Source: Klebsormidium nitens
Taxonomy: Eukaryota > Plantae > Klebsormidiophyceae
DNA length: 64,000 nt
Assembly (NCBI GenBank): GCA_000708835.1
Contig: DF237281.1
Span: forward strand, 1 to 64,000
Reading direction: 5' to 3'
A program made the translations under genes and the position numbers. The notes beneath the pieces are model-generated. The model was not told the DNA's origin and searched no databases. It saw nothing but the letters and a program-made list of their open reading frames with translations. Of this stretch, positions 2,060 through 13,165 are shown one piece after another (positions within the stretch are counted from its first letter, which is position 1; every line of letters starts with the position of its first letter).

Positions 2060-5000
2060 CTACAAATCACCCGAGTCAAATACGTCATTGTAAACCCCCT
2101 GTAGCTGCCCGCAGGTCTTGACATCTACCCCCATGTCTAACAAGCCTGACATTGCCGCCAGGAACGCCGTCTGGAAATCCGCACCAACCCGAGTGTTGTT
2201 GGACGTCCGACTGTCTGTAAATGTATCGTCGAGGTTTGGGCCCGCCACGAGCGCGCCGGTCACTAGGCCGAGCTGCGGGTTCGGCAGCCCTGGGAAGTAG
2301 CCGTTGAAGAAGTCGCACGGCTGGTTTGCGTCCGCCGGGCACGACGACTCGCGGTCCGGAATGCGGGTAGGCCGGTGGTAACCCTTGTTGCCGAACCCGA
2401 CGACATAGCTCCAACTGTCGGGGTACAGGAAATTGTCGCCCATCATGTACCGCATCTGGCCCAGGGCCCAGCACTTGAGGCCACGCTTCTGGTCCGTGTT
2501 CGTCTTGTTTGAGGTAGAATAGATTAGGGCGAGGAAGGAGGCCGCGGCGGCGTTGGGCAGGGGCGCGTCCTTGGTCCACGCGAGGGACAGGTCGGTCGAC
2601 CTGCAGGGACGGACGGGAGCACTTGGATCAGCTTTTGAAGGTTTTCGAAGAGCCTTAGGAATCGTCGTGATACACCGCTTTGCGTTCTGGACATGTAGCC
2701 CGGAGCTGACACGAAACCCCAAGATATCTGATGTTTGTCGTCCGCTTTTATTTCAGAGCAGGGATGCCTAGAGAAAGGACGAAGCAGAGAAGCAGGACGA
2801 CACGCAAGAGGATTTTGATCGGATTGTCAGGCTGGCTCGGAGCAATGCCACCCAAACAACTCAGATGCTTGTCCTTCATCTCAAAGGGTCATACATCCAA
2901 GCAGAACGAAACCACTGCCATACGACACTGCCATACGACACTGCCATAACCTCAAGTCCTCTTTCCCAGCCTCTCGTAAGCGGTCAGCAGAATAGCAGAA
3001 AACTGCCGCGCTGGATGCTTCTGAACATTGCATGAGTGCAGGCACTCACTGCACGGGCATGAAGGGGCAGTCGGGGTCCTCCATATCCGTCAGACCATCG
3101 CAGTCGTTGTCGCGCCCGTCGTTGCAGTTCTCCTCGAACGTTACCGCGAACGGGTCGGTAAGGATCACTGGGCCGGTGGCCCCGAGCGCGGCGTTCTTGA
3201 GCGCGAGCTGCGCGGCGACGAGCTTGGCCTCCTTTGTGGTGTTGCGGTCGGGGGTGCAGCCGTCGAAGACCAGGAACGACTGGTTGTTGAACGTCTGGAT
3301 GTTCTCCTTGATCATGTTCTGGTTCTTGACCGCCTGGGACGCCAGCTGCTTGGCCGCGAGCTGTGGGGAAAAGGACGGCTTCAGAAAGAGCTCTCGTCGG
3401 GGGCCAGTCTCAGGAATCTGTATGCCTTATATGACGGAAGTGTTTGCCGTGCACCATACTCTTTGAAGACCCGATTGAAAAGCAGACACGCTGTCGATGC
3501 GGCCAGAAAACCGGGCACCAGCGTCGAGGCAGATGATCACTCCGGATAAGATCCCTTCCTAACCGAGAAGACTTTAGTTGACTGGTCACAGACTCGGCTC
3601 GCCTTCCTTCAAGCGTAGAAAGGCTTGCGCATGCCCCGAATTCCAGAAAGTCACCATTGCGGAACTTCGAGATGTGGAATCATCCGTGTTCAGCAACGCC
3701 GTCGAAGCCCACCATCAAACGCCTTCCCTCTCAACAAATGACCAGATGCCGTTTCATTCCGGCAAACATCAAACGGCTTCCCTTTGCGCACTGTCACCCA
3801 GAAGCTTCCGCTGATGCTGAACAATACCCAGCATCCAGTCACCCTGACTAACGTACGTCTCAAGGTTTGCACGCATTGGACAGCCGGGCCAGCGCGCTTA
3901 CCACGTCGGGGCTGATCTTGGGCGGCGTAAGCTCGACCCAGGCGCGCAGGAAGGTGCGGATCTGCTCGTGGTACTGCGGCAGGTCGGTCACCCGGGCCAG
4001 CACGCTGGCGGCCGCCCAGACCGCGGTGTCGTAGTTGTACACGTAGTAACCCGCCTCCGTGTTCGCCTGCGCGCCCACTGCCTCGCGCGCCAGGTGCTGC
4101 GTCATGTAGAACTGCACAGGCACATCGAGGAAGATTAGGGTTTAGGAGTTTAGGTTAGGTTTGATTTTGGTTTCGGATCGTCCCCGCGGGCGAAGTCGGA
4201 GCGACAAGGAAGTGCTCAGGTTTTTGCACGCCTGTTGCAGTGGGGCGTGACTGTGGAATGACGTTCCCAAAACAATCGTCTGCGGCCGTAGGTCTCTCAC
4301 CAGACTTGTACTAATCTGCTGAAAGATTTCAAGTTCACTCCATGAATACCATGTGCTGTTCACTGTATCGCGCGCAGTCAGGTGCCGCTGATGCCGGTTG
4401 AGGTCAAGCTCTCAGAATATTTCCTGAGCTTTTCCCTGAAAACCCACTGGGCCCCGTAGCTTTTGAAACAAACAAACACGTCTCACAACGACCTTGTAAC
4501 GCACCTGCGCGTCCCCGAGATACCGCTCCTGCCCCGTCGCCAGGAACAGCGCCACGCCAGCCCACGAGAGGTCATCCAGCACCGTATGGCTGGGGTAAAA
4601 GTCGACGGGCACCGTCGTCTGCACCAGCTTCTGCTCCTGCTGCGCCAGCACGTTTTGCGGCAGGTTCAGGAACGGCGACACGTCGACGGTTTGGAGAAGC
4701 CGCCTGTTGCTGGGTGACACGTCATTTTCGAGGAGGCGTCGCGCGGGGAGCGTGGGTTCGGGCAGAACCGGGGCTGCTGTGACTACTGCTTTGACTGTGG
4801 GAACGGGCGTTGATGGAGCGGGCGTTGGCGGGGGCGCGCACGACGGGTCGAAGAAAGGCCCCACGCCGCCGACCATGACGTACAGCCCGTTGCAGCAGGC
4901 CGCTTTGTCATCGAAGCGGGTCTTCGAATCTGCAGAGGAAAGAAGGGAGCCCGGTAAGGTTTTGTTGCGGCAGGCTGCATGGTCAAGATGAGACCTGCGT

Positions 5001-8000
5001 GGTTAGGCGTGGTAAGGCGGGAGAGCAAAAGCTTTGAAATTCTAAAATGAGACTAAAATGCTAAAAACACTACAGGGACCAGCGATAGAAGAGCACACTC
5101 TAGCAAGACGTACTTGGCACTCCAAGCTGGCTTTTTCAGCGAGATTGTGCTCACTGCCGCTGGCCCAAATCAGTAACGCCTGCCGACCACCAATAAGAGC
5201 AACCACTTACAAACTAGGAATGGCTGATGAAGCTGCTTCACATTGGGCAGCACGACAGACGTCGAAAGCGCAGGATTTAATCGACTCGGAAAGGCGCAAC
5301 TCGAGACTGAGGCACTCACTGAAATCGGCGCACTTGGCATCCTCGAAACCGGGGAGCGCGGACGGCAAATTGATGCAGCGCTTTCCCGCAAGGTCGGCAA
5401 CCCAGCACGTGGATAGAGCGGTGTCTCCGCACAAGCCCCGGCCGGGGCTGTCGCTGTTGATGGCCCCTTTGGCCACGAGCGAGTTGCAGCACGTGAGCGC
5501 CGAGTCGAACTGGTCAGTCGCCCCTGCACAAGGGACAGGAGCGTTCCGGTGAGTAACAGCGACACGTTGGAACAAAGGGACGGGTTGACAGGAAACGTTC
5601 GTCAAGACATTGCTTTGCTAAGACTCCACCGAGTCTGTCGGGGAATGCATCTAGGTGCGGTTACCAACACCAGATGCTTGGATAAGACACTTGGAGTTCT
5701 TTGACTGACCGAACCTGGAACGAATTGAACACAAAAATTTCGAAACTTTGTCACTATAACCACCACCAGAAGACTCTTGCTCTCCAAGTGACAAAAGAAC
5801 CTGGGCATCTTACCAAATGCAGCACACTGCGATCCAGAAGTCGAGTTCAGCTGGACGCAGGAGCGCGAGACGGTGTTCGGCACGAAGCAGGTGGAGGGGC
5901 CCAGGGCGCAGACTCCACGTCCGGGCGCGGAGGCAGTGATTGCCTGGCTCTTGGTGAGCTGGTTGCAGCAGGACTCGGGGGTGGGGAAGAAGTCCTGGCC
6001 GAGACCGGTGCAGCCCTTGCCGGTATCCAGGCTGATGGTCTGGGTGAGGCAGTCGCGGGTCTGTAGCTGGGGGACGAAGCACTCGAACTGGCCTTCGGGA
6101 AGGGCGCATGCGCCCTGCAAATGAGGAGGGGACAAGACTTGGACATCTGGCATTTTTGTTTGAAGAAATCAGCGACTGTCTCCTTCAAAGTGGCATGGAC
6201 TTCGTACTAGGATCAGTAACGGGAATGGAAGAGTGGCAAGGTTAGACGAGAAACGAGGCTTAAAAAGCGGTCGTTGCAGGTGACTGGTGAGACTAGAGTT
6301 TTGTGAGACTAGAGTCTTGCAGGCTCACATCCTCCTTCCAGATGAACTCTGCTGAGACAAGCTTCGCTAGCTAGGAAGTGGACCAACGTGAGCAGCATCC
6401 TTCCGGTGCTTCAGCTTGATGCACACCAAGTCAGCTGAGCTCTGGAACGAATGGTCACCTGGGGAGTCGTCTGGTTCTGCCACACCCCTGCCGAGCGCAT
6501 GAATGCGCAGCAGCTGCTGCGGCGCGTGTAGACCGGCGCCGTCTGGGCCGCGTTCAGGCACAGCCCCTCGTCCTTCAGGAACCCGCACGTGGCCAGCGGG
6601 AAGTCAGGCACCCAGCACTTGATCTCGGCGGGGTCCAGGTTCGCGCTCGCGGGGAGCGGCACGACAGGCACCATCTTCGCCTTGGACACCGTCGTTCCGC
6701 ACGGGACGAATGCGCAGTACGACTGCTCTTGCCCCGGGGTGGACTTCGCGAGCGTGAACAGGGTTTCGGCGCCCTGGAGGAAGCTGTCGGCCTGCTGCGT
6801 GTTGCCAGAGTTGCGCACGAGGACCGACGACAGCGCGAGGGCGGCCGCGCTCTCGGCGAGGAGGTCGACACCGACGTGCGTGCTGTCGAGGATGTACGCT
6901 TGGCGGGCTGTGCCGAGGTTAGGGTCATTCTGGAGGCGCGTCCAGATGGAGCCCAGCGAGGGGGCGTCACCCTCAGTGAGGTATTTGGTTGGGTCGCCCA
7001 CCTGGTCAAGAGGAAACTTGCGAGTGAGGTCTTGGCTTGAAAGCACAAGGCTTCTCTGGGCGAAAGCCGCGGTTCAATTGCTAATATGTCCAGATAATAA
7101 ACCACTATGAGGATATCATTTTAGGTGGCTACACAATGCATCTAATGGCACACAATTCAGGCAGGTGCTTCAGATACCTAGTCTGCCAGCTTGAGATCGT
7201 GGGAGAAGGAGTTCCAACTTATCAAACATGTCCAACGAAGACCATGGACGTCAGCCGGAATGGATATCACTCAGCTTTGCAAGAAAGCTCGCGAAGAGTT
7301 GTATCTCTAAAGTGGCACGATTTTCTGCTGCATCAGTATCCAAGGAAGAGAACGAGGCACGAAGCGCTGATGGTCGCACTGAGATAGATCACGGTACGTG
7401 ACAATATGCTGCTCAAGGGCGCATGTTCGGTCCGGAATAGCGCACCTGGGCGACGAAGACGGAATTGGTCGGATCCCAGTTGTTCAGGATGTAGGTCCCG
7501 GCTGCAACCACGTTCTGTAGCGACTGGTCGAAGACCTCCGCATCCTTGTAGCCCTGAGGGAACTCCAGCATGCTCCAGGCCAGGAGAGAAGCGCTGGTGG
7601 CCAGGGGCATCCCGTACTTGACCGGGTCGCTGCCGATAAGCCACCCTCCCGTGACGTCCTTCTGAGAAGCGGTGCCGTTGCTAATGGCGGCGATGTCTTG
7701 GAAGGAAGCCGCGTTGGTCCTCTGCAACGAAGAGGATCGGGTGTGTCAAACTCCACGTCCCGACCAAGCCACTGAGCACAGTGCACAGGTGCTGCAACCA
7801 ACTTCCGCCCCGCTTTCAGGACTTTATCCAACATTTAAGAGACCTTCAGCACTGCCCGCCGTCAAGTCGCCAGCTCAGACTCAAAGCCCTGAATCTTCTT
7901 TGCGAACTCACAACCCTCCCCAACCCTGAATCATCTCAGACCTGGTGTCTTGTAGGAGGGGCTCAACCAGACTTCTCACCAGCTGCGACAGGTAGCTCCC

Positions 8001-11000
8001 GGCCTTGAACGTTGCTTCCTTCATGTTGAAGTCGACGGGTACAGTGGCCCACAGCAAGACGACAGCGCCCAGCAACGTCAGTGTTCCCAGGAACTGCCCC
8101 CACGCGGCGGCTTTTCTGAAGGGCTTGCCGGACGTGAATGAATAGACGACAAACAGGAAGGGTGCGATGGAATTGTACAGCGCCCAGAACAGGGGCAGGC
8201 CGACGTAGGGCGAGAGGCTGACGTAGCGCGCACCGCGTCCGCCTGCCGGCGTGGTAGCTGTGCGCCAGATGGCCATGCCCACGACCTGGAAGGGGCACAG
8301 ACGCACTTAAGAAGCGATTGATGCGCTCAGCTTCTTGACTCTCTCGAACTGTCTGACTAAATGCGGCATCAGTTGGAAGTTCGTGCAGAGAGTCTAGGGT
8401 CCAGAGAACCTTCGTGCTACATTTTACGGCACTCTTTGCTTCTTGTACATTCCTCCTAAACTCGACTGCTGAGGAAGACACCCGTCGATCTAGGAAAATG
8501 CTAGCACTCAAAAGTCCCTGCATCATTGTCACCAGCTTGCAGCCCGCCTTGTACACCGTTTGTTAGCGTCCATAATCGCCTCGTACACCGTCCGTACACT
8601 GTCTTAGCAATTCCACGAGGAGAACACTCACCGCCAGGCAGAAGCCGAGCATGATGTACAGCACCGTGGGGTCCAGCACGCCCCCCACGTCCACCAGATT
8701 CTTCGCCACGAAGATGGACGCAAACCGCTTGTACCACGGCGCGCGCTTCGGGGGGAGCGGGCGGCTCTCTGAGAGGAGCGGCTCTGTTTCCCGGGGGTTG
8801 TTCACGACCACCGTCAGATTCACAGGGCCTCCGGGAGTCCCCACAACCGACACGCCACTGCTATCCTGGGACTGAAGCGGGCTGTACGGAGCGGGGGGTG
8901 CCCGTTCGCCGGAGGGCGTAGCCCCCCCCGGCTGAAACTCGTGCACCGAGGTAGGGGTGGCTCCCGGAGTGGGGGCATCAGCCTTCTCGACGCTCGCGTA
9001 GGTGACCCCCTCAAAAGGACGGGGCGGGGGGGCGTCCCGGCGGCGGCTGCTGACGCGGGAAAGGACGCGGTTGAACCCGCGCTGGACAGCGGCCAAGGGG
9101 AGGGCGAGCGCTGTCTCGGCGACCTAAGAGCAGATGAAGGACGGAGTTTTCTGGAGCTTTCAGAGGAGGTGCCACGTGAGTAGAAAAGGTGTTGCCCAAA
9201 AGGAGGTGCAGGGGACGCTCTTACGATGGATCTTTCATATAGAATCTTGAGGTTGAGGGATCAACTTTGGAGCAATGATTTCGTAGACCATGCCTACCAC
9301 TCCGTCTACACTACAGATCTTGGGGTTTAAAACACGACCCCAGGAGCCAGACAGCAAGAAGTCTTCTCGACATTAAGCACTGCCTCCGCTCGGGACGCCT
9401 TACCTTCTTCTCCGTGACCTTGAAGCCAACGCCGCCCTTGAGCCCGAACTTGGACAACAGCACGTTGATGACGGCCTTGGTGTAGGTGAACCAGAGGACC
9501 GTGTTGCTGATGTTGGCAAACCACAGCGACTTGATGTGCGCCAGCCGGTGGAAGTAGGTCTGGACAAGGAAGATTGCCAGGTAGTACATGGTGGCCCCTG
9601 CCGCAAACCAGTAGTTGATGATCACGGGGTTAAGGCCGAAACCCAGGGACAGGAACGGGATGAGGAGCGAGACGGGGGTCGCGATCACGTTCACGATGTA
9701 GCTCCAGGTGCCGTACGAGTACCACAGCTTCTGGAAGATGCTCAGGCGCCACTGCGTGAGGGGGCTGTACTTCCAACTGAAGAACACCTGCAGCAGGACG
9801 GAAGAGGCGATTTCGTCTCAAATGGCTTGACAGTGCCGAGATAACCCTGCTTTCAGCAAAAGCATCAATCAGCCAGTCGAATCTTGCAATGGATGATTCC
9901 AAGCAGAATCGTGCGGCATCTTCCACTGTACTTTAATATCCTCAGGGAAAAAGCTGTTTCCTCCAGGGCGCTCGCCATGCACAATTGGTGTCTGCGCAGC
10001 GTGAGGGCAAAGAAAGTGTTGCATCTAGTATCATGAAGAATCCGCAGCGCCCCGATTGCCAGATCGACGTTCACCTGCATGTGGCCCTTGCACCAGCGGC
10101 TGCGCTGCCGCATAACGTTGCGGACCTCATCGGGCGCTTCTCCTTCGGCAATGTAGTCCAGCAGGTATGAACCCTTGTAGCCATGCTTCTTGAGCTCCAT
10201 ACCCAGGGCGTAGTCCTCCGTAATGGTGTACTGGAGAGGTGACATTGGCATGGCGTCAGGAGGCAATCAGTGCGGCAAGAGGGAACAGGCGACTGCTGTA
10301 TTCCTTCAGGTGCCCCTCCTGCTGGTTGCGGGGCGTTCTCAGGTTGAACACGTGCAATATTGCCATAGACTGTGCGTAATTGCCTGACTGGAGACCTTGA
10401 GGGGTGGCCACCGAAGGCATGCCAAACATTGTGAGCAATATTTAGGGAAAAAAGAGAGTAGGAAGGACTCACAGTGGGGAAGAACTTGCAGTGCGCCAGA
10501 GGTCTGGCGCGGATGGCAAAGTTGGTCCCTGTGCACGCGATGTAACCCCAGGCGACGGCACCGGGTAGCCAGTACTCCCAGAACTGGAGGTTGATGTTGT
10601 TGAAGAGGTCCGCGCCAGGATGGATATTGTGAAAGGCCTAAAAGACAAAGGTAAGTTGTGAGTATCTGCGTTCCTATTGTACAATGTCACAGCAATTTCC
10701 CCAGTTGATGAGCAAGTTGACAGTTTCTAATATCAGGAAGATCTGAACCATGCCAAAGCGCCCAACGTTCCGCTACAGATGTTGAGAACACAGTGCTTGA
10801 CTTTCAAACTTACCTGGGGTGATAGGCAAAGAGCGTATTTGGGGTTTGTGAGAGGCTCCAGGATGCGCAGGAAGAAGTGCTTCTTGGCCACCATATCCGC
10901 ATCGAAAACCACAATGATCTCAGTCTCTGGGATCTTCTCCCAGCTGATCTCCTTTGTCCCAGGATACCGGTAACTGCAGGAGAACCAACAGCAATTGTGC

Positions 11001-13165
11001 TTATTTTCGCTTTCAAGGATAAGTACTTGGATCATGAGGATACGAGGGGAAGCAGCTGTAGCTATCAAAGCTTTTTAACACAACTCTCAGAACATCATGC
11101 TTAGTCAATCCTTTGAGCACACGGTGTGCAAACTTACTCTTTGTAGATTACGTTCATGAGGCAGTTGTTGAGGTTGCTAGACTTTCCATTTGTGTCCTTA
11201 GGAATCTTTTTCCGGCCACTGACATACTCCACGTCCCTGCCCTCAGCCGCCAGCTGCTCAATAAACACCTTTTTGGGCTCCTCATTGCCTGCGCAAACAA
11301 CCAAATGCCTCTTAGAACTCGCGAAGCTGACTACACAAAGAGCGACGCTTGATGAGAACCAAATCAAATTAGAAACTGCTAGGCAGTTGCTCTGGCTGCC
11401 ATTCTGCCTAAGCTAGATAAATTCTTTAGTAGGGTGTCAGTATATCACTGAAGCAGTAACAAACAGGCATAGACAAGACCATAAAGCATGGAAACCTGGG
11501 TCTTTGATAGGCTTACCATCATCGCAAAGATACACGGTCCTCTTTGCCCCCATTGGGAGATCAGCGTTTAGGGCCCCCATCACCGTTGGCTTTATGACGC
11601 TCATATCCTCCTTGTAACAGGGAATTAGAACCCGCACATGGAAACTGCAAGGTGACCAAACTGCTCATGAGCCTCCTACCATCTGCAGTACGTGCACAAG
11701 TGCCACCAGGAAATTGCTCACAAATACTGCCTGTCATCATTCAGGTTGCTCTTACTTCATCTTGCATTGCCACCGACATGTCGCTTGGGAAGGTTTTCGC
11801 ACGAACGTGGTACAATGATCGTATGGATATAGCAGCTCACTTGAAACGCTCGGTTGAATTCAGCCCTTCCTCCTCAGCTGGTAGCCCAGTGGCACTCCCT
11901 TTGGGAACAAGGCTGATGGTGAGGAGAATGGCATAGGGCAGAGTGGCAGAGAGCCCTAGGAACTCAACCACAAGAACCACGATTCCATACCTGTTGGAAA
12001 GAAAGGGCTCGTTTGACCACACCAAGTATGTGGGGTTGATGTTCAATCCCTGTCTACCATTTTGAGTTTTAGGGTTTAGATCACTCCTTTGCAGAAAGAA
12101 GCGACGTCTGAAAGATTCTAGCTCTTGACCTCGTTACTTTCTCGTGTACATTGCTGCAGCTGCATACAGAAGGCCACCTTGCAATCTTGCCCTTTCAAGA
12201 GAGAGTGGGGACATGTGTGGTTGGAGAGAGATTTTGCTGCCAAAAACTAGAGTTCAAACTTACGCAAAGACTGGGCCAGTCACGAGTGTCTTCGTGATGC
12301 GGACGTAAAAGTAGAAGGCGGCGGCACAGAGGTAGAAGATCAGGAGTAAAACTGGCACAAAGTTGACCTTGATGTGCAGTGGTGTCCTGACTGGCATCTT
12401 GTACTGCAATCAGCAAGCACAAAGTCTTTGAGGAGACAGGAGAGATGAACAAAGCCTTCAGGAACGAAGTGGAAAACACTCCTGCGAAGCAAATGGTAGG
12501 AAGCAGGTATTGCAACATGGAGCTTGGGACATTCTTAATCAGTAACAGAGCGCGGCATCCTGCATTATGCAGACAATTATCCAAATCCAGGTTTCACTTT
12601 CGTGTTAGGCAGTCTCGACATCAGAATGGACTGAAAGTGCAGTGCAATGCACACCTGCGAGAGGTACTCGGCAACAGCCTCTGGAGAAGCATTGGGGACC
12701 ATAGGCCTTGTAGGCCTTTCCTCCTCTTCATCGATCTCAGAGGTAGGACCATCGAAGGGTACTGCCGGCCTGTGAGGACCACAAAGTGACAAGACATCAG
12801 CGATGTCGGGAAAGGCTTACTTCAGCAAAGTACAGATGGGGCACTCTGTGCAGCTTGGAAACTGCACGGCTCGAAGGACCAGACAATAATCATATGCGCA
12901 GGCTTTTGTGTCTAGAGGCCTCACAAGGTAGCAGAACACTGGTAAGTGAAGCAACTCCTCATGTTACTGATTTTGTTCAGCACATTGCAGTCTTCTTGAA
13001 AGTAGTGGCGGCAGATCTGCTGGTTCGAAGGAGAGCCATATGACTCTGGGAAAAGGACCCGTTTCCATACCTTCCAAACCGGACATGGGGTCCATTTCCC
13101 CGAGGGGCATTCCTGCCATTCCTCTGGTTCATGAGCTCCAAATCCATCGCGTTCTGGCCTCGCAT
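2060..13165 (-). CDS. Bacterial-type GT2 processive beta-glucan (cellulose synthase-like) synthase fused to a C-terminal GH9-like domain; 20 exons, ~1750 aa
   Basis: Hand-built exons, all GT-AG and phase-compatible: 13165-13071, 12769-12655, 12403-12264, 11990-11841, 11644-11517, 11288-11138, 10973-10814, 10637-10473, 10230-10075, 9787-9404, 9123-8632, 8285-7980, 7721-7446, 7001-6459, 6114-5814, 5523-5320, 4929-4505, 4111-3902, 3360-3050, 2600-2060 (5253 nt, single stop TAG at 2062-2060). GT2 motifs: IPCYKE, LCDDG, GKSSNLN, FDAD, SPQAFHN, TED, QRSRW, FKVTEK. GH9 motifs: DVTGGW...VKYGMP, VGD, DLLAESAAALA, DDLSWAGVALFLATG, QMRYMMGDN, SYVVGFG, GALVAGP. Confidence 0.88.
2913..2948. repeat. Short intronic tandem repeat, 13-bp unit x ~2.8
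   Basis: cactgccatacga cactgccatacga cactgccata, inside the last intron of the fusion gene. Confidence 0.8.
4830..6625 (-). repeat. Four tandem ~63-aa six-cysteine protein repeats inserted in the GH9-like domain
   Basis: Spliced repeats: CWVPDFPLATC..C..YTRRSSCC..C, CFVPQLQTRDC..C..FPTPESCC..C, CFVPNTVSRSC..C..FDSALTCC..C, CWVADLAGKRC..C..FDDKAACC..C. Spacing C-x9-C and [FY]-x5-CC-x17/18-C is conserved. Confidence 0.85.
9404..12403 (-). other. GT2 synthase core of the fusion gene (TM1-2, catalytic domain, TM3-4, gating loop)
   Basis: Canonical D,D,D,QxxRW signature (DDG at ~11520, DAD at ~10900, TED at ~10215, QRSRW at ~10100) and an FxVTxK gating-loop motif at ~9410-9425. The layout is compact and BcsA-like, with no plant CESA RING finger or P-CR/CSR inserts visible. 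Confidence 0.92.

What the first reader, a model, noticed from the sequence alone, without database searches (positions are those of the whole stretch)
2060..13165. Bacterial-type cellulose-synthase-like GT2 fused to an extracellular GH9 barrel: a one-gene synthase plus glucan-binding module
Seen in sequence: the ORF track suggests two genes, but the last membrane-helix exon (8285-7980) has no stop. It already encodes the first GH9 helix (VPVDFNMKEATFKAGSYLSQL, matching the GH9 Y.Y.EAL.KSLLFYEAQR start) and splices phase 0 across a 258-nt GT-AG intron into RTNAAS...DVTGGW. All 20 exons join into one ~1750-aa frame. Inference: seven hydrophobic helices (2 before and 5 after the GT domain) put the GH9 part outside the cytosol, which fits its many Cys residues and NxS/T sequons. 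Established: bacterial bcs operons pair BcsA with a separate endoglucanase (BcsZ, GH8), plant CESA complexes use a separate GH9 (KORRIGAN), and tunicate CesA is a GT2-GH6 fusion. A GT2-GH9 fusion in an alga would be an independent version of the tunicate design. The polymer made (cellulose, mixed-linkage glucan or other) cannot be read from the sequence. I cannot confirm that it is undescribed; similar fusions may exist unannotated in other green algae.
Basis: partly seen in the sequence, partly recalled or inferred. Interest (0 to 1): 0.92.

Follow-up and report, generated by a model that had tools for sequence, protein, structure and literature searches.

The report
Cellulose-synthase-like gene fused to dead cellulase
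One expressed algal gene joins an intact bacterial-type cellulose-synthase-like enzyme to an outward-facing cellulase-like (GH9) domain that has lost its catalytic residues; the same fusion sits unremarked in dozens of green-algal proteomes and parallels the sea-squirt cellulose synthase.

Summary
RNA contigs of about 6.0 kb from three independent studies run through both the GT2 exons and the GH9 exons. All four runs laid show the 7980/7721 splice (258-nt GT-AG intron, phase 0). My 20-exon model gives one 1800-aa frame.

The GT2 half keeps every processive-synthase motif (DDG, DxD, TED, QRSRW, FKVTEK). Its nearest solved relative is bacterial BcsA. The GH9 half is a true GH9 fold, but one catalytic Asp, the conserved His pair and the catalytic Glu are replaced. 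A colinear orthologue in a metagenome has the same replacements, so this is a stable pseudo-enzyme.

Hydropathy, and an AlphaFold model of a homologue, give 2+2+3 membrane helices. That places the GH9 part outside the cytosol.

The fusion is not unique. About 67 GT2-GH9 proteins from Ulvophyceae, Trebouxiophyceae and Chlorophyceae are in public databases as "hypothetical protein" or "cellulase". Only a few basal ones keep the catalytic residues. I found no paper that describes the architecture.

Earlier notes of this scan say the genome is Klebsormidium nitens, a streptophyte. Both halves of the gene nevertheless nest among chlorophycean copies, which suggests alga-to-alga transfer. The pseudo-enzyme reading was also noted by this scan on this same stretch.

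Verdict: real, moderately novel, and a natural analogue of the tunicate GT2-GH6 synthase.

The parts
2060..13165 (-). Whole coding region of the fused gene: 20 exons, 5403 nt, 1800 aa, stop codon at 2062-2060
   Evidence: Model. The RNA contigs of about 6 kb fit CDS plus UTRs.
11138..13165 (-). Exons 1-6 (13165-12984, 12769-12655, 12403-12264, 12053-11841, 11644-11517, 11288-11138): N-terminus, TM1 (12358-12302), TM2 (11983-11927), start of the GT2 domain with DDG (11532..11287, split by the intron between exons 5 and 6) and the NGKSSNLN motif (11190-11167)
   Evidence: GT..AG sites and frame read. Homologue tblastn. The end at 11138 is fixed by the RNA loose end. The donor of exon 1 is uncertain.
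10075..10973 (-). Exons 7-9 (10973-10814, 10637-10473, 10230-10075): GT2 catalytic core with DxD (FDADM, 10906-10892), TED (10221-10213) and QRSRW (10107-10093)
   Evidence: RNA joints, refined. Pfam GT2 hits. Motif coordinates.
9404..9787 (-). Exon 10: TM3 (9688-9632), TM4 (9625-9569), amphipathic interface helix (9529-9446), gating-loop motif FKVTEK (9424-9407)
   Evidence: RNA joints. Hydropathy. Helix order in the AlphaFold model of the homologue.
8632..9123 (-). Exon 11: about 140-aa Pro/Ser/Ala-rich linker with no family match (inferred cytosolic), then the first half of TM5
   Evidence: RNA joints. No Pfam match. Sequence.
7980..8285 (-). Exon 12, the junction exon: end of TM5, TM6 (8204-8136), TM7 (8090-8034) and the first GH9 helix (8042-7980)
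7722..7979 (-). 258-nt phase-0 GT-AG intron that joins the synthase half to the GH9 half
   Evidence: The joint is seen in 4 of 4 RNA runs.
6459..7721 (-). Exons 13-14 (7721-7446, 7001-6459): N-terminal half of the GH9 barrel. The degenerate DAGD motif GGWLIGSDPVKY is at 7649-7614.
   Evidence: Pfam PF00759. PDB alignments. Family alignment.
4838..6620 (-). Insertion inside the GH9 barrel (end of exon 14, exons 15-16, start of exon 17): four six-cysteine modules, followed by a Pro-rich spacer
Evidence: Sequence. Homologues P0002, P0008 and P0033 align here.
2063..4929 (-). Exons 17-20 (4929-4505, 4111-3902, 3360-3050, 2600-2060): C-terminal half of the GH9 barrel. HHR is replaced by PDR (2365-2336). 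The catalytic Glu is replaced by Arg in SNNTRVGADF (2212-2174). A Cys/Asp-rich CNDGRDNDCDG..DPDC motif lies at 3126-3067.
   Evidence: Pfam 62.2 bits. PDB alignment. Family alignment. Exon joins supported by homologue lengths and by locus L001.

Best explanation
This is one gene for a seven-helix membrane protein. Its cytosolic half is an intact, processive, BcsA-like family-2 glycosyltransferase. It most likely takes UDP-glucose and pushes a beta-glucan chain, probably beta-1,4 (cellulose), through its own membrane channel. Only a few residues after the last membrane helix, on the outer face where the chain emerges, the same polypeptide continues into a GH9 (alpha/alpha)6 barrel. This barrel has lost the catalytic acid (Glu to Arg), one of the two catalytic Asp (DAGD to IGSD) and the conserved His pair (HHR to PDR). 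It also carries inserted disulfide-type Cys modules. The barrel is therefore most likely a non-hydrolytic glucan-handling module built into the synthase. It could receive, hold or guide the nascent chain, or tether the synthase to the wall. This role is comparable to what KORRIGAN (GH9) or BcsZ (GH8) do as separate proteins, and to the mutated GH6 domain of tunicate CesA. Shown: the fusion transcript, intact GT2 motifs, GH9 homology, loss of catalytic residues, and conservation of that state. Inferred: topology, the polymer made, and the binding role.
For: Fusion: about 6-kb RNA contigs from three studies, and the 7721/7980 joint in four runs, give a single 1800-aa frame.

GT2 intact: YLCDDG, FDADM, TED, QRSRW and FKVTEK are all present. 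The best solved relatives are BcsA (4HG6, 5EJ1) at E 1e-18 and Foldseek 4P00 at 5e-19. The best NCBIfam model is CelA, TIGR03030.

GH9 fold: three exon pieces score above the Pfam gathering score. The homologue model matches Eisenia GH9 at E 1e-13 with TM 0.65.

Dead active site: alignments to solved GH9s give YDAGDH->LIGSDP, HHR->PDR and NEV->TRV. A colinear orthologue, L001, at 43-83% identity per exon keeps the same replacements while also keeping DxD, TED and QRSRW. Most of the about 67 fused family members also lack the Glu.

Topology: hydropathy gives 2+2+3 helices, and the interface helix is not hydrophobic enough to span the membrane. The AlphaFold model of P0039 (pLDDT 77.8, pTM 0.77) has TM1-2, the GT domain, TM3-4, interface helices, TM5-7 and then GH9. 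The GH9 part holds 34 of the protein's 43 Cys and 7 sequons.

Both domain trees recover the same clades, which fits one old fusion.
Against: There is no biochemical evidence for the polymer. The score against the bacterial CelA equivalog model is far below its cut-off (94-164 bits against 699, on homologues). The second Asp of DAGD and the Arg of HHR are retained, so a non-canonical activity cannot be excluded. The topology rests on helix counting and on a model of a homologue, not of this protein. Binding of glucan by the dead cleft was not tested. The limits of exons 1-6 and 17-20 are predicted. The word share of 2063-4929 in spliced-only runs (0.50-0.55) is slightly above the 0.48 my model predicts.
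Confidence: 0.7

Rival explanations
1. The GH9 domain is still a working endoglucanase that trims or releases the chain in cis (a KORRIGAN or BcsZ built into the synthase), using substitute residues.
For: Basal members of the family (the Ostreobium clade P0102, P0098, P0100, P0091, and P0041, P0113) keep DAGD, HH and the Glu. The ancestral fusion partner was therefore probably active. The window protein keeps the second Asp and the Arg.
Against: The proton donor Glu is Arg, the first Asp is Ile, and both His are gone. The same replacements are fixed in the orthologue L001. Different clades have lost these residues in different ways. That pattern is what relaxation of catalysis with retention of the fold looks like.
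Confidence: 0.1
2. The synthase makes a polymer other than cellulose (mixed-linkage or beta-1,3 glucan, mannan, or a GlcNAc polymer). The GH9-like domain would then bind that polymer, or an existing wall component as an anchor.
For: Homologues score only 94-164 bits on the CelA equivalog model against a cut-off of 699. They also match PgaC and NodC models weakly. Related BcsA-like green-algal Csl families are discussed in the literature as possible MLG or other beta-glucan synthases (bioRxiv 10.1101/2023.01.31.526407).
Against: CelA/BcsA is the best hit by sequence and by fold by many orders of magnitude. The fused partner belongs to a family that acts on beta-1,4-glucan. The FxVTxK gating loop and QxxRW are of the cellulose-synthase type.
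Confidence: 0.2
3. There are two separate genes (a synthase and a secreted GH9), and the joined contigs are read-through or assembly artefacts.
For: The raw ORF track shows separate blocks. Logan contigs are assemblies, not single molecules (caveat printed).
Against: The 7721/7980 joint is a canonical in-frame splice seen in 4 of 4 runs at the same depth as the flanking exons, with about zero depth in the intron. The first GH9 helix lies in the TM7 exon. No start codon or signal peptide precedes the GH9 part. About 67 proteins, including complete transcriptome ORFs (P0037, P0038, P0046), have the same order. The colinear locus L001 has it too.
Confidence: 0.02
4. The GH9 part is cytosolic, because the amphipathic helix after TM4 spans the membrane and gives an even number of helices after the GT domain.
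For: The segment at 9529-9446 is moderately hydrophobic. The positive-inside counts of the short loops do not decide the matter.
Against: This segment stays below the hydropathy threshold. In solved BcsA and CESA structures the equivalent helix is interfacial and the FxVTxK loop that follows must reach the cytosolic active site (established structural knowledge; fold match). 34 Cys in repeated six-Cys modules and 7 sequons argue for an extracytosolic location.
Confidence: 0.03

Closest known systems
Tunicate cellulose synthase CesA (GT2 fused to a C-terminal GH6 domain)
   Same: Both are a single polypeptide with a bacterial-type processive GT2, then membrane helices, then a C-terminal cellulase-family domain whose catalytic residue is mutated and which is thought not to hydrolyse (PMC10334666).
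   Different: The hydrolase family is GH9 ((alpha/alpha)6 barrel), not GH6. The host is green algae, not chordates. Here the domain carries inserted Cys-rich modules. In my GT2 trees, GT2-GH6 proteins (from metagenomes and the amoeba Leptophrys vorax; no tunicate sequence was in the set) form the sister clade, not the same clade. The two fusions are therefore separate events.
Bacterial cellulose synthase BcsA with the separate endoglucanase BcsZ (GH8)
   Same: The GT2 core, TED/QxxRW, the FxVTxK gating loop and the channel architecture are shared. BcsA is the best sequence and fold match. The synthase is paired with a cellulase-family protein on the outer side of the membrane.
   Different: There is no PilZ domain or c-di-GMP module and no BcsB partner. 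There are 2 rather than 4 helices before the GT domain. The hydrolase-like part is GH9, is fused, and is catalytically dead. The score is far below the CelA equivalog cut-off.
Plant CESA complex with KORRIGAN (membrane-anchored GH9)
   Same: The helix plan is the same 7-TM plan (2 + 5, C-terminus outside). A GH9 sits at the outer face next to the synthase. Plant CESA8 and CesA models match the fold (E about 1e-9).
   Different: The GT2 is not of the CESA/CslD type: there is no zinc-finger N-terminus, P-CR or CSR, and no CESA sequence hit at E<1e-3. KORRIGAN is a separate, active type-II membrane protein. Here the GH9 is fused after TM7 and lacks the catalytic residues.
BcsA-like 'CslP'-type GT2 of green algae (Feng et al., bioRxiv 10.1101/2023.01.31.526407; Nat Genet 2024)
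   Same: These are described as bacterial-BcsA-like GT2 of green algae that cluster with the CesAs of oomycetes, tunicates, amoebae and red algae.
   Different: That paper does not mention a GH9 fusion. I had no CslP sequence, so I could not test whether the window's GT2 falls in that group.

Membership tests
Processive GT2 of the cellulose-synthase superfamily (BcsA/CESA-like) | Catalytic motifs D (DDG), DxD, TED and QxxRW | tested here: met
   YLCDDG at 255-260, FDADM at 333-337, TED at 422-424 and QRSRW at 460-464 of the model. Pfam Glyco_trans_2_3 scores 29.4 bits against 27 on exon 9.
Processive GT2 of the cellulose-synthase superfamily (BcsA/CESA-like) | Gating loop FxVTxK after an interface helix, and a channel-forming TM bundle | tested here: met
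   FKVTEK at 592-597. There are seven helices plus interface helices by hydropathy and in the AlphaFold model of homologue P0039. Foldseek matches BcsA over about 600 columns.
Bacterial UDP-forming cellulose synthase catalytic subunit (NCBIfam TIGR03030 CelA equivalog) | Score above the curated cut-off (699.1 bits) | tested here: not met
   Homologues P0039, P0033, P0102 and P0083 score 94-164 bits. CelA is the best model but falls far below its cut-off. The window protein itself could not be submitted whole.
Bacterial BcsA | C-terminal PilZ domain (c-di-GMP control) | tested here: not met
   No fused family member carries PF07238. Only the bacterial outgroup does. In the window, GH9 follows TM7.
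Cellulose synthase (function) | Product is beta-1,4-glucan made from UDP-glucose | not testable with these tools
   This needs expression and linkage analysis.
Glycoside hydrolase family 9 (PF00759) | Sequence and fold of the (alpha/alpha)6 barrel | tested here: met
   Exon pieces score 42.5, 35.9 and 62.2 bits against a gathering score of 27.7. PDB GH9 hits are at 4e-11 and 1.5e-12. The homologue model matches 8IHY with TM 0.65.
Glycoside hydrolase family 9 (active enzyme) | Catalytic Asp pair in the DAGD motif | tested here: not met
   GGWYDAGDHVKF of solved enzymes aligns to GGWLIGSDPVKY. The first Asp is Ile and the second is kept. The orthologue L001 has the same pattern.
Glycoside hydrolase family 9 (active enzyme) | Catalytic acid Glu in the ..NEV(A).DYNA motif | tested here: not met
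   The Glu aligns to Arg (SNNTRVGADF). L001 has ATRVGAD. Most family members also lack it.
Glycoside hydrolase family 9 (active enzyme) | Conserved His-His-Arg before SSCP | tested here: not met
   HHR aligns to PDR (RIPDRESSCP). L001 has the same.
Tunicate-type CesA (GT2-GH6 fusion) | C-terminal GH6 domain (PF01341) | tested here: not met
   The C-terminal domain is GH9. GT2-GH6 proteins form a separate sister clade.
Green-algal GT2-GH9 fusion family (unnamed; public entries called hypothetical protein, cellulase or six-hairpin glycosidase) | PF13632 GT2, then TM helices, then PF00759 GH9 in one protein; placement inside the clade in both domain trees | tested here: met
   The window groups inside the family in the GT2 tree, in the 22-row chlorophycean clade (100/99), and is sister to the Chlamydomonadales long forms (93/86, not starred). 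It does the same in the GH9 tree (99).

The most novel reading that the evidence does not exclude
The GT2-GH9 proteins could be the long-sought self-contained cellulose-making subunit of chlorophyte algae, which lack rosette-type CESA. In that reading the catalytically dead GH9 barrel acts as a built-in receiver that takes the nascent chain at the channel exit and controls its release or assembly into microfibrils. Nature would then have separated the 'binding' role from the 'cutting' role of the endoglucanases that accompany every known cellulose synthase (KORRIGAN, BcsZ). In addition, the copy in this genome (said to be the streptophyte Klebsormidium nitens) would have arrived from a chlorophycean alga by alga-to-alga gene transfer.
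Probability: 0.3. Interest if true: 0.8.

Novelty: new variant of a known kind. Interest (0 to 1): 0.6.

Why it matters
Every well-studied cellulose synthase works next to a cellulase-family protein: BcsZ in bacteria, KORRIGAN in plants, and the GH6 domain in tunicates. Why a hydrolase is needed for synthesis is still debated.

This family provides a natural experiment. The same synthase is covalently tied to a GH9 domain that is apparently active in a few basal lineages (the Ostreobium clade) and catalytically dead in most others, including this gene. The two states can be compared directly.

The family also gives a concrete candidate for the enzyme that makes cellulose or a related beta-glucan in core chlorophytes, whose walls are built without plant-type CESA rosettes.

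Finally, if the genome is Klebsormidium, it is a likely case of wall-gene transfer between land-dwelling algae.

Tried and rejected
1. Automatic exon chaining by codon log-odds and by maximal length failed in two ways. The first skipped the AT-richer GT2 exons and inserted two micro-exons (4387-4364, 3558-3490). The second over-extended exons. I rejected the micro-exons for three reasons. The direct joins 4505|4111 and 3902|3360 are in phase. They match homologue lengths (P0002 and P0008). The HSP limits in the orthologous locus L001 fall at those joins.

2. I rejected the donor at 4487 in favour of 4505, because all homologue alignments end at 4505.

3. Searching for the window's own annotated protein found no row marked as the window's own. 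I cannot say whether the public annotation of this genome has the fusion or splits it.

4. The representative search with one GH9 exon gave only 28 hits. Several of them (Ig-repeat proteins P0005 and P0024) matched only the Cys-rich tail and are irrelevant.

5. Pfam found nothing in the linker, the junction exon or the CNDGRDNDCDG exon.

7. The second run search could not decide fine exon limits. The share was 0.50-0.55 against a predicted 0.48.

8. No related wall genes were recognisable among the ORFs next to the gene.

Full report
**1. What is there**

The region 13165-2060 holds one minus-strand, intron-rich gene. I laid Logan contigs of four RNA runs from four studies on 5000-10999. All four runs gave the same nine canonical joints, CT..AC on the plus strand.

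In three runs a single contig of 5980-6030 nt covers every exon from 10636 to 5320 and continues beyond both ends. The loose ends map to 11138 and 4929. After shifting each joint to GT..AG, the ten RNA-defined exons translate into one open 995-aa frame. It runs from the GT2 core through the membrane helices into GH9.

Depth inside the 258-nt intron is about nil. The only unspliced material is a set of contigs at depth 3-15, against about 1200 for the spliced form, over other introns in run X1.

**2. The rest of the model**

I read the remaining splice sites by eye against three-frame translations. I checked them with tblastn of homologues and with a colinear orthologous locus from a metagenome, L001.

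The result is 20 exons, 5403 nt and 1800 aa, all GT..AG. Two micro-exons proposed by my first automatic chaining were dropped; the reasons are under Tried and rejected.

The donor of exon 1 (12984 or about 13071) and the 5' end remain uncertain. Contig lengths leave about 260-480 nt of 5' sequence and about 280-330 nt of 3' UTR.

**3. The synthase half**

The model carries these motifs:
- YLCDDG
- the NGKSSNLN equivalent of KAGNLN
- FDADM
- TED
- QRSRW
- the gating-loop motif FKVTEK

Exon pieces hit Pfam GT2 families. I used the full-length homologue P0039 because a spliced protein cannot be handed to the tools.
- By sequence, the best solved relatives are Rhodobacter and E. coli BcsA (1e-18 and 1e-11). 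Barley CslF6 scores only 2e-4 and no plant CESA appears.
- By fold, the order is BcsA (5e-19), then plant CESA and CslF6 (1e-9 to 1e-8), then hyaluronan synthase.
- The best NCBIfam model is CelA, but at 94-164 bits against a cut-off of 699.

"Bacterial-type cellulose-synthase-like" is therefore right. "Cellulose synthase" is a likely inference, not a demonstrated fact.

**4. The GH9 half**

Three exon pieces exceed the Pfam gathering score for GH9. They match solved GH9 endoglucanases at 4e-11 and 1.5e-12. Those alignments show the following changes:

| Motif in solved GH9 | Window sequence | Change |
|---|---|---|
| GGWYDAGDHVKF | GGWLIGSDPVKY | first catalytic Asp is Ile, second kept |
| HHR | PDR | both His lost, Arg kept |
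| NEV | TRV | catalytic acid Glu is Arg |

The domain is thus a GH9 fold without the canonical catalytic machinery. This agrees with an earlier first-stage note on the same stretch (s1-321861).

The barrel is interrupted by two features. The other is a Cys/Asp-rich CNDGRDNDCDG..DPDC motif (3126-3067). Both are also present in the Haematococcus and Chlamydomonas eustigma homologues.

**5. The junction**

Exon 12 aligns to P0039 residues 709-771 and to the transcriptome-derived Chlamydomonas euryale protein P0037 residues 494-597. In the AlphaFold model of P0039 (52-sequence alignment, pLDDT 77.8, pTM 0.77) these residues are TM6 (707-732), TM7 (736-762) and the start of the first GH9 helix (769-782).

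The splice falls inside the family's conserved ...AQR motif (consensus of A1). A GH9 gene starting at exon 13 would lack its first helix, a start codon and a signal peptide.

**6. Topology**

Kyte-Doolittle analysis gives seven segments: 115-133, 170-188, 504-527, 525-543, 751-769, 790-812 and 828-846. The helix at 557-584 stays below the threshold.

The AlphaFold model of the homologue shows the same order: TM1-2, GT domain, TM3-4, two interface helices, gating loop, TM5-7, GH9.

The GT domain and the gating loop must be cytosolic, as in solved BcsA and CESA structures (established knowledge). Three helices then follow, so the GH9 part is outside. Of the protein's 43 Cys, 34 lie in this part, together with 7 N-x-S/T sequons. 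This is an inference.

**7. The family**

A profile-free scan of 1.84 billion representatives with one GH9 exon gave only 28 hits. One was a 1998-aa Haematococcus protein with GT2 and GH9.

Searches seeded with that protein, with Raphidocelis P0039 and with C. eustigma P0033 returned about 67 proteins that carry PF13632 and PF00759 together. They come from:
- Chlamydomonadales: Haematococcus, C. eustigma, C. sp. UWO241, C. euryale
- Sphaeropleales: Raphidocelis, Monoraphidium, Tetradesmus
- Trebouxiophyceae: Coccomyxa, Trebouxia, Myrmecia, Elliptochloris, Apatococcus, Symbiochloris, Botryococcus, Chlorella sorokiniana
- the ulvophyte Ostreobium
- many metagenome contigs

Source names are "hypothetical protein", "cellulase", "six-hairpin glycosidase" or "endoglucanase". 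Complete transcriptome ORFs (P0037, P0038, P0046) show the fusion at the RNA level in other species too.

Motif columns show that only six members keep DAGD, HH and the Glu: the Ostreobium clade plus P0041 and P0113. All the others have lost the Glu, in clade-specific ways.

In a FastTree of 119 GT2 domains and an IQ-TREE (LG+C20) of 54, the family is one clade (100* and 99/96*). The residue-keeping lineages are basal when rooted on BcsA-PilZ. Some GT2-only members are nested inside. A GT2-GH6 clade is sister. The GH9-domain tree recovers the same main clades. This fits one old fusion to an active GH9, followed by repeated loss of catalysis and occasional loss of the domain.

**8. A stable state, not decay**

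The metagenome locus L001 is colinear with the window gene over all exons from residue 69 to 1795 (43-83% identity). It has the same junction exon and the same dead GH9 residues (GGWLIGADPVRY, RIPDR, ATRV). It also has intact FDADM, TED and QRSRW. GH9 exons are conserved at 60-67%, close to the 72-83% of the GT2 exons. The gene is well expressed in every RNA study listed.

**9. Whose genome**

The tools hide the organism. Earlier follow-up notes of this scan on other pieces of the same genome call it Klebsormidium nitens. The two coded organism names of the RNA runs would fit the nitens/flaccidum synonymy. I did not verify this.

If it is true, the gene is the only streptophyte member I saw. 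It does not branch outside the chlorophyte family.
- In both domain trees it is sister to the Chlamydomonadales long forms.
- An AU test rejects placing it outside all 44 other family rows (p = 4e-5).
- The test does not quite reject placing it outside the 21-row chlorophycean clade (p = 0.057).
- The groups were defined after seeing the tree.

Alga-to-alga transfer is the simplest reading. Ancient paralogy with losses is the alternative.

**10. Comparison with what is known**

The layout is the tunicate one. Tunicate CesA is GT2 plus a C-terminal GH6 domain whose catalytic Asp is mutated and which "seems functionless" (PMC10334666). Here the hydrolase family and the host differ, and the GT2-GH6 proteins in my set form a separate clade.

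Bacteria (BcsA + BcsZ) and plants (CESA + KORRIGAN) pair the same two activities as separate proteins.

The Zygnema genome papers describe BcsA-like "CslP" GT2s in green algae without mentioning a GH9 domain. I could not test whether this family is CslP.

Nine literature queries and four targeted readings found no description of a GT2-GH9 fusion. The library lacks most subscription journals, so this is absence of evidence only.

**11. Verdict**

- The gene is real, expressed and intact in its synthase half.
- Its GH9 half is a conserved pseudo-enzyme that most likely sits outside the membrane.
- Novelty is moderate: the proteins are already in public sets and the design has a known analogue. 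The family as such appears undescribed.
- The family offers a clean handle on why cellulose synthases keep a cellulase-like partner.

Noticed in passing
P0114, P0117, P0119, P0120, P0122, P0125, P0126 (related proteins, not in the window): GT2 fused to GH6 (PF01341), the tunicate-type layout, occurs in metagenome and Logan contigs and in the transcriptome of the algivorous amoeba Leptophrys vorax. These proteins form the sister clade of the green-algal GT2-GH9 family. GT2+GH5 (P0151) and GT2+GH16 (P0156) also turned up.
   Followed up: partly
window 2060-13165 versus the family trees: If the genome is Klebsormidium nitens (a streptophyte, per earlier notes), both halves of this gene nest with Chlamydomonadales copies. 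AU rejects a position outside the whole chlorophyte family (p 4e-5). It does not reject a position outside the chlorophycean clade (p 0.057). This is a candidate alga-to-alga horizontal transfer.
   Followed up: partly
L001:1474-15025 and L002 (JGI metagenomes 3300060284 and 3300060285): These carry a colinear orthologue of the whole fused gene, at 43-83% aa identity per exon and GC 0.54. It has an extra intron inside the equivalent of exon 13 and no intron between exons 2 and 3. One HSP runs past the exon 19 end and overlaps the next. That may be an intronic copy of the exon edge, of the kind other notes describe for this genome.
   Followed up: partly
window 6620-4838: Four tandem modules with six Cys each (pattern C..C[FWY]VP..C....C....CC), then a Pro-rich spacer, are inserted in a loop of the GH9 barrel. 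They are shared with the Haematococcus and Chlamydomonas long forms and are absent from the short forms such as Raphidocelis P0039.
   Followed up: partly
window 3126-3067: A CNDGRDNDCDGLTDMEDPDC motif, resembling bacterial Cys/Asp-rich metal- or calcium-binding repeats, lies inside the GH9 part. It is conserved in Haematococcus P0008 (CYDGIDDDCNGLVDKEDTAC). It has no Pfam match.
   Followed up: no
window 7031-7371, 8257-8659, 9096-9431: Low-depth RNA contigs (depth 3-15 against about 1200) cover introns in run X1. Runs of study P1 hold 0.75-0.98 of all genomic words of the gene, so those libraries carry unspliced RNA or DNA.
   Followed up: no
window 2063-4929: The share of sampled words in spliced-only RNA runs is 0.50-0.55, against the 0.48 my exon model predicts. 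This could be sampling noise, unspliced fragments, or about 100-200 nt of exon that I missed.
   Followed up: partly
P0113, P0167, P0060, P0118 (related proteins): Some public models join the GT2(-GH9) protein to unrelated domains: kinesin in Elliptochloris, FGGY kinase in Chlorella sorokiniana, and VHA-F and midA in Scenedesmus. These are probably merged neighbouring genes.
   Followed up: no
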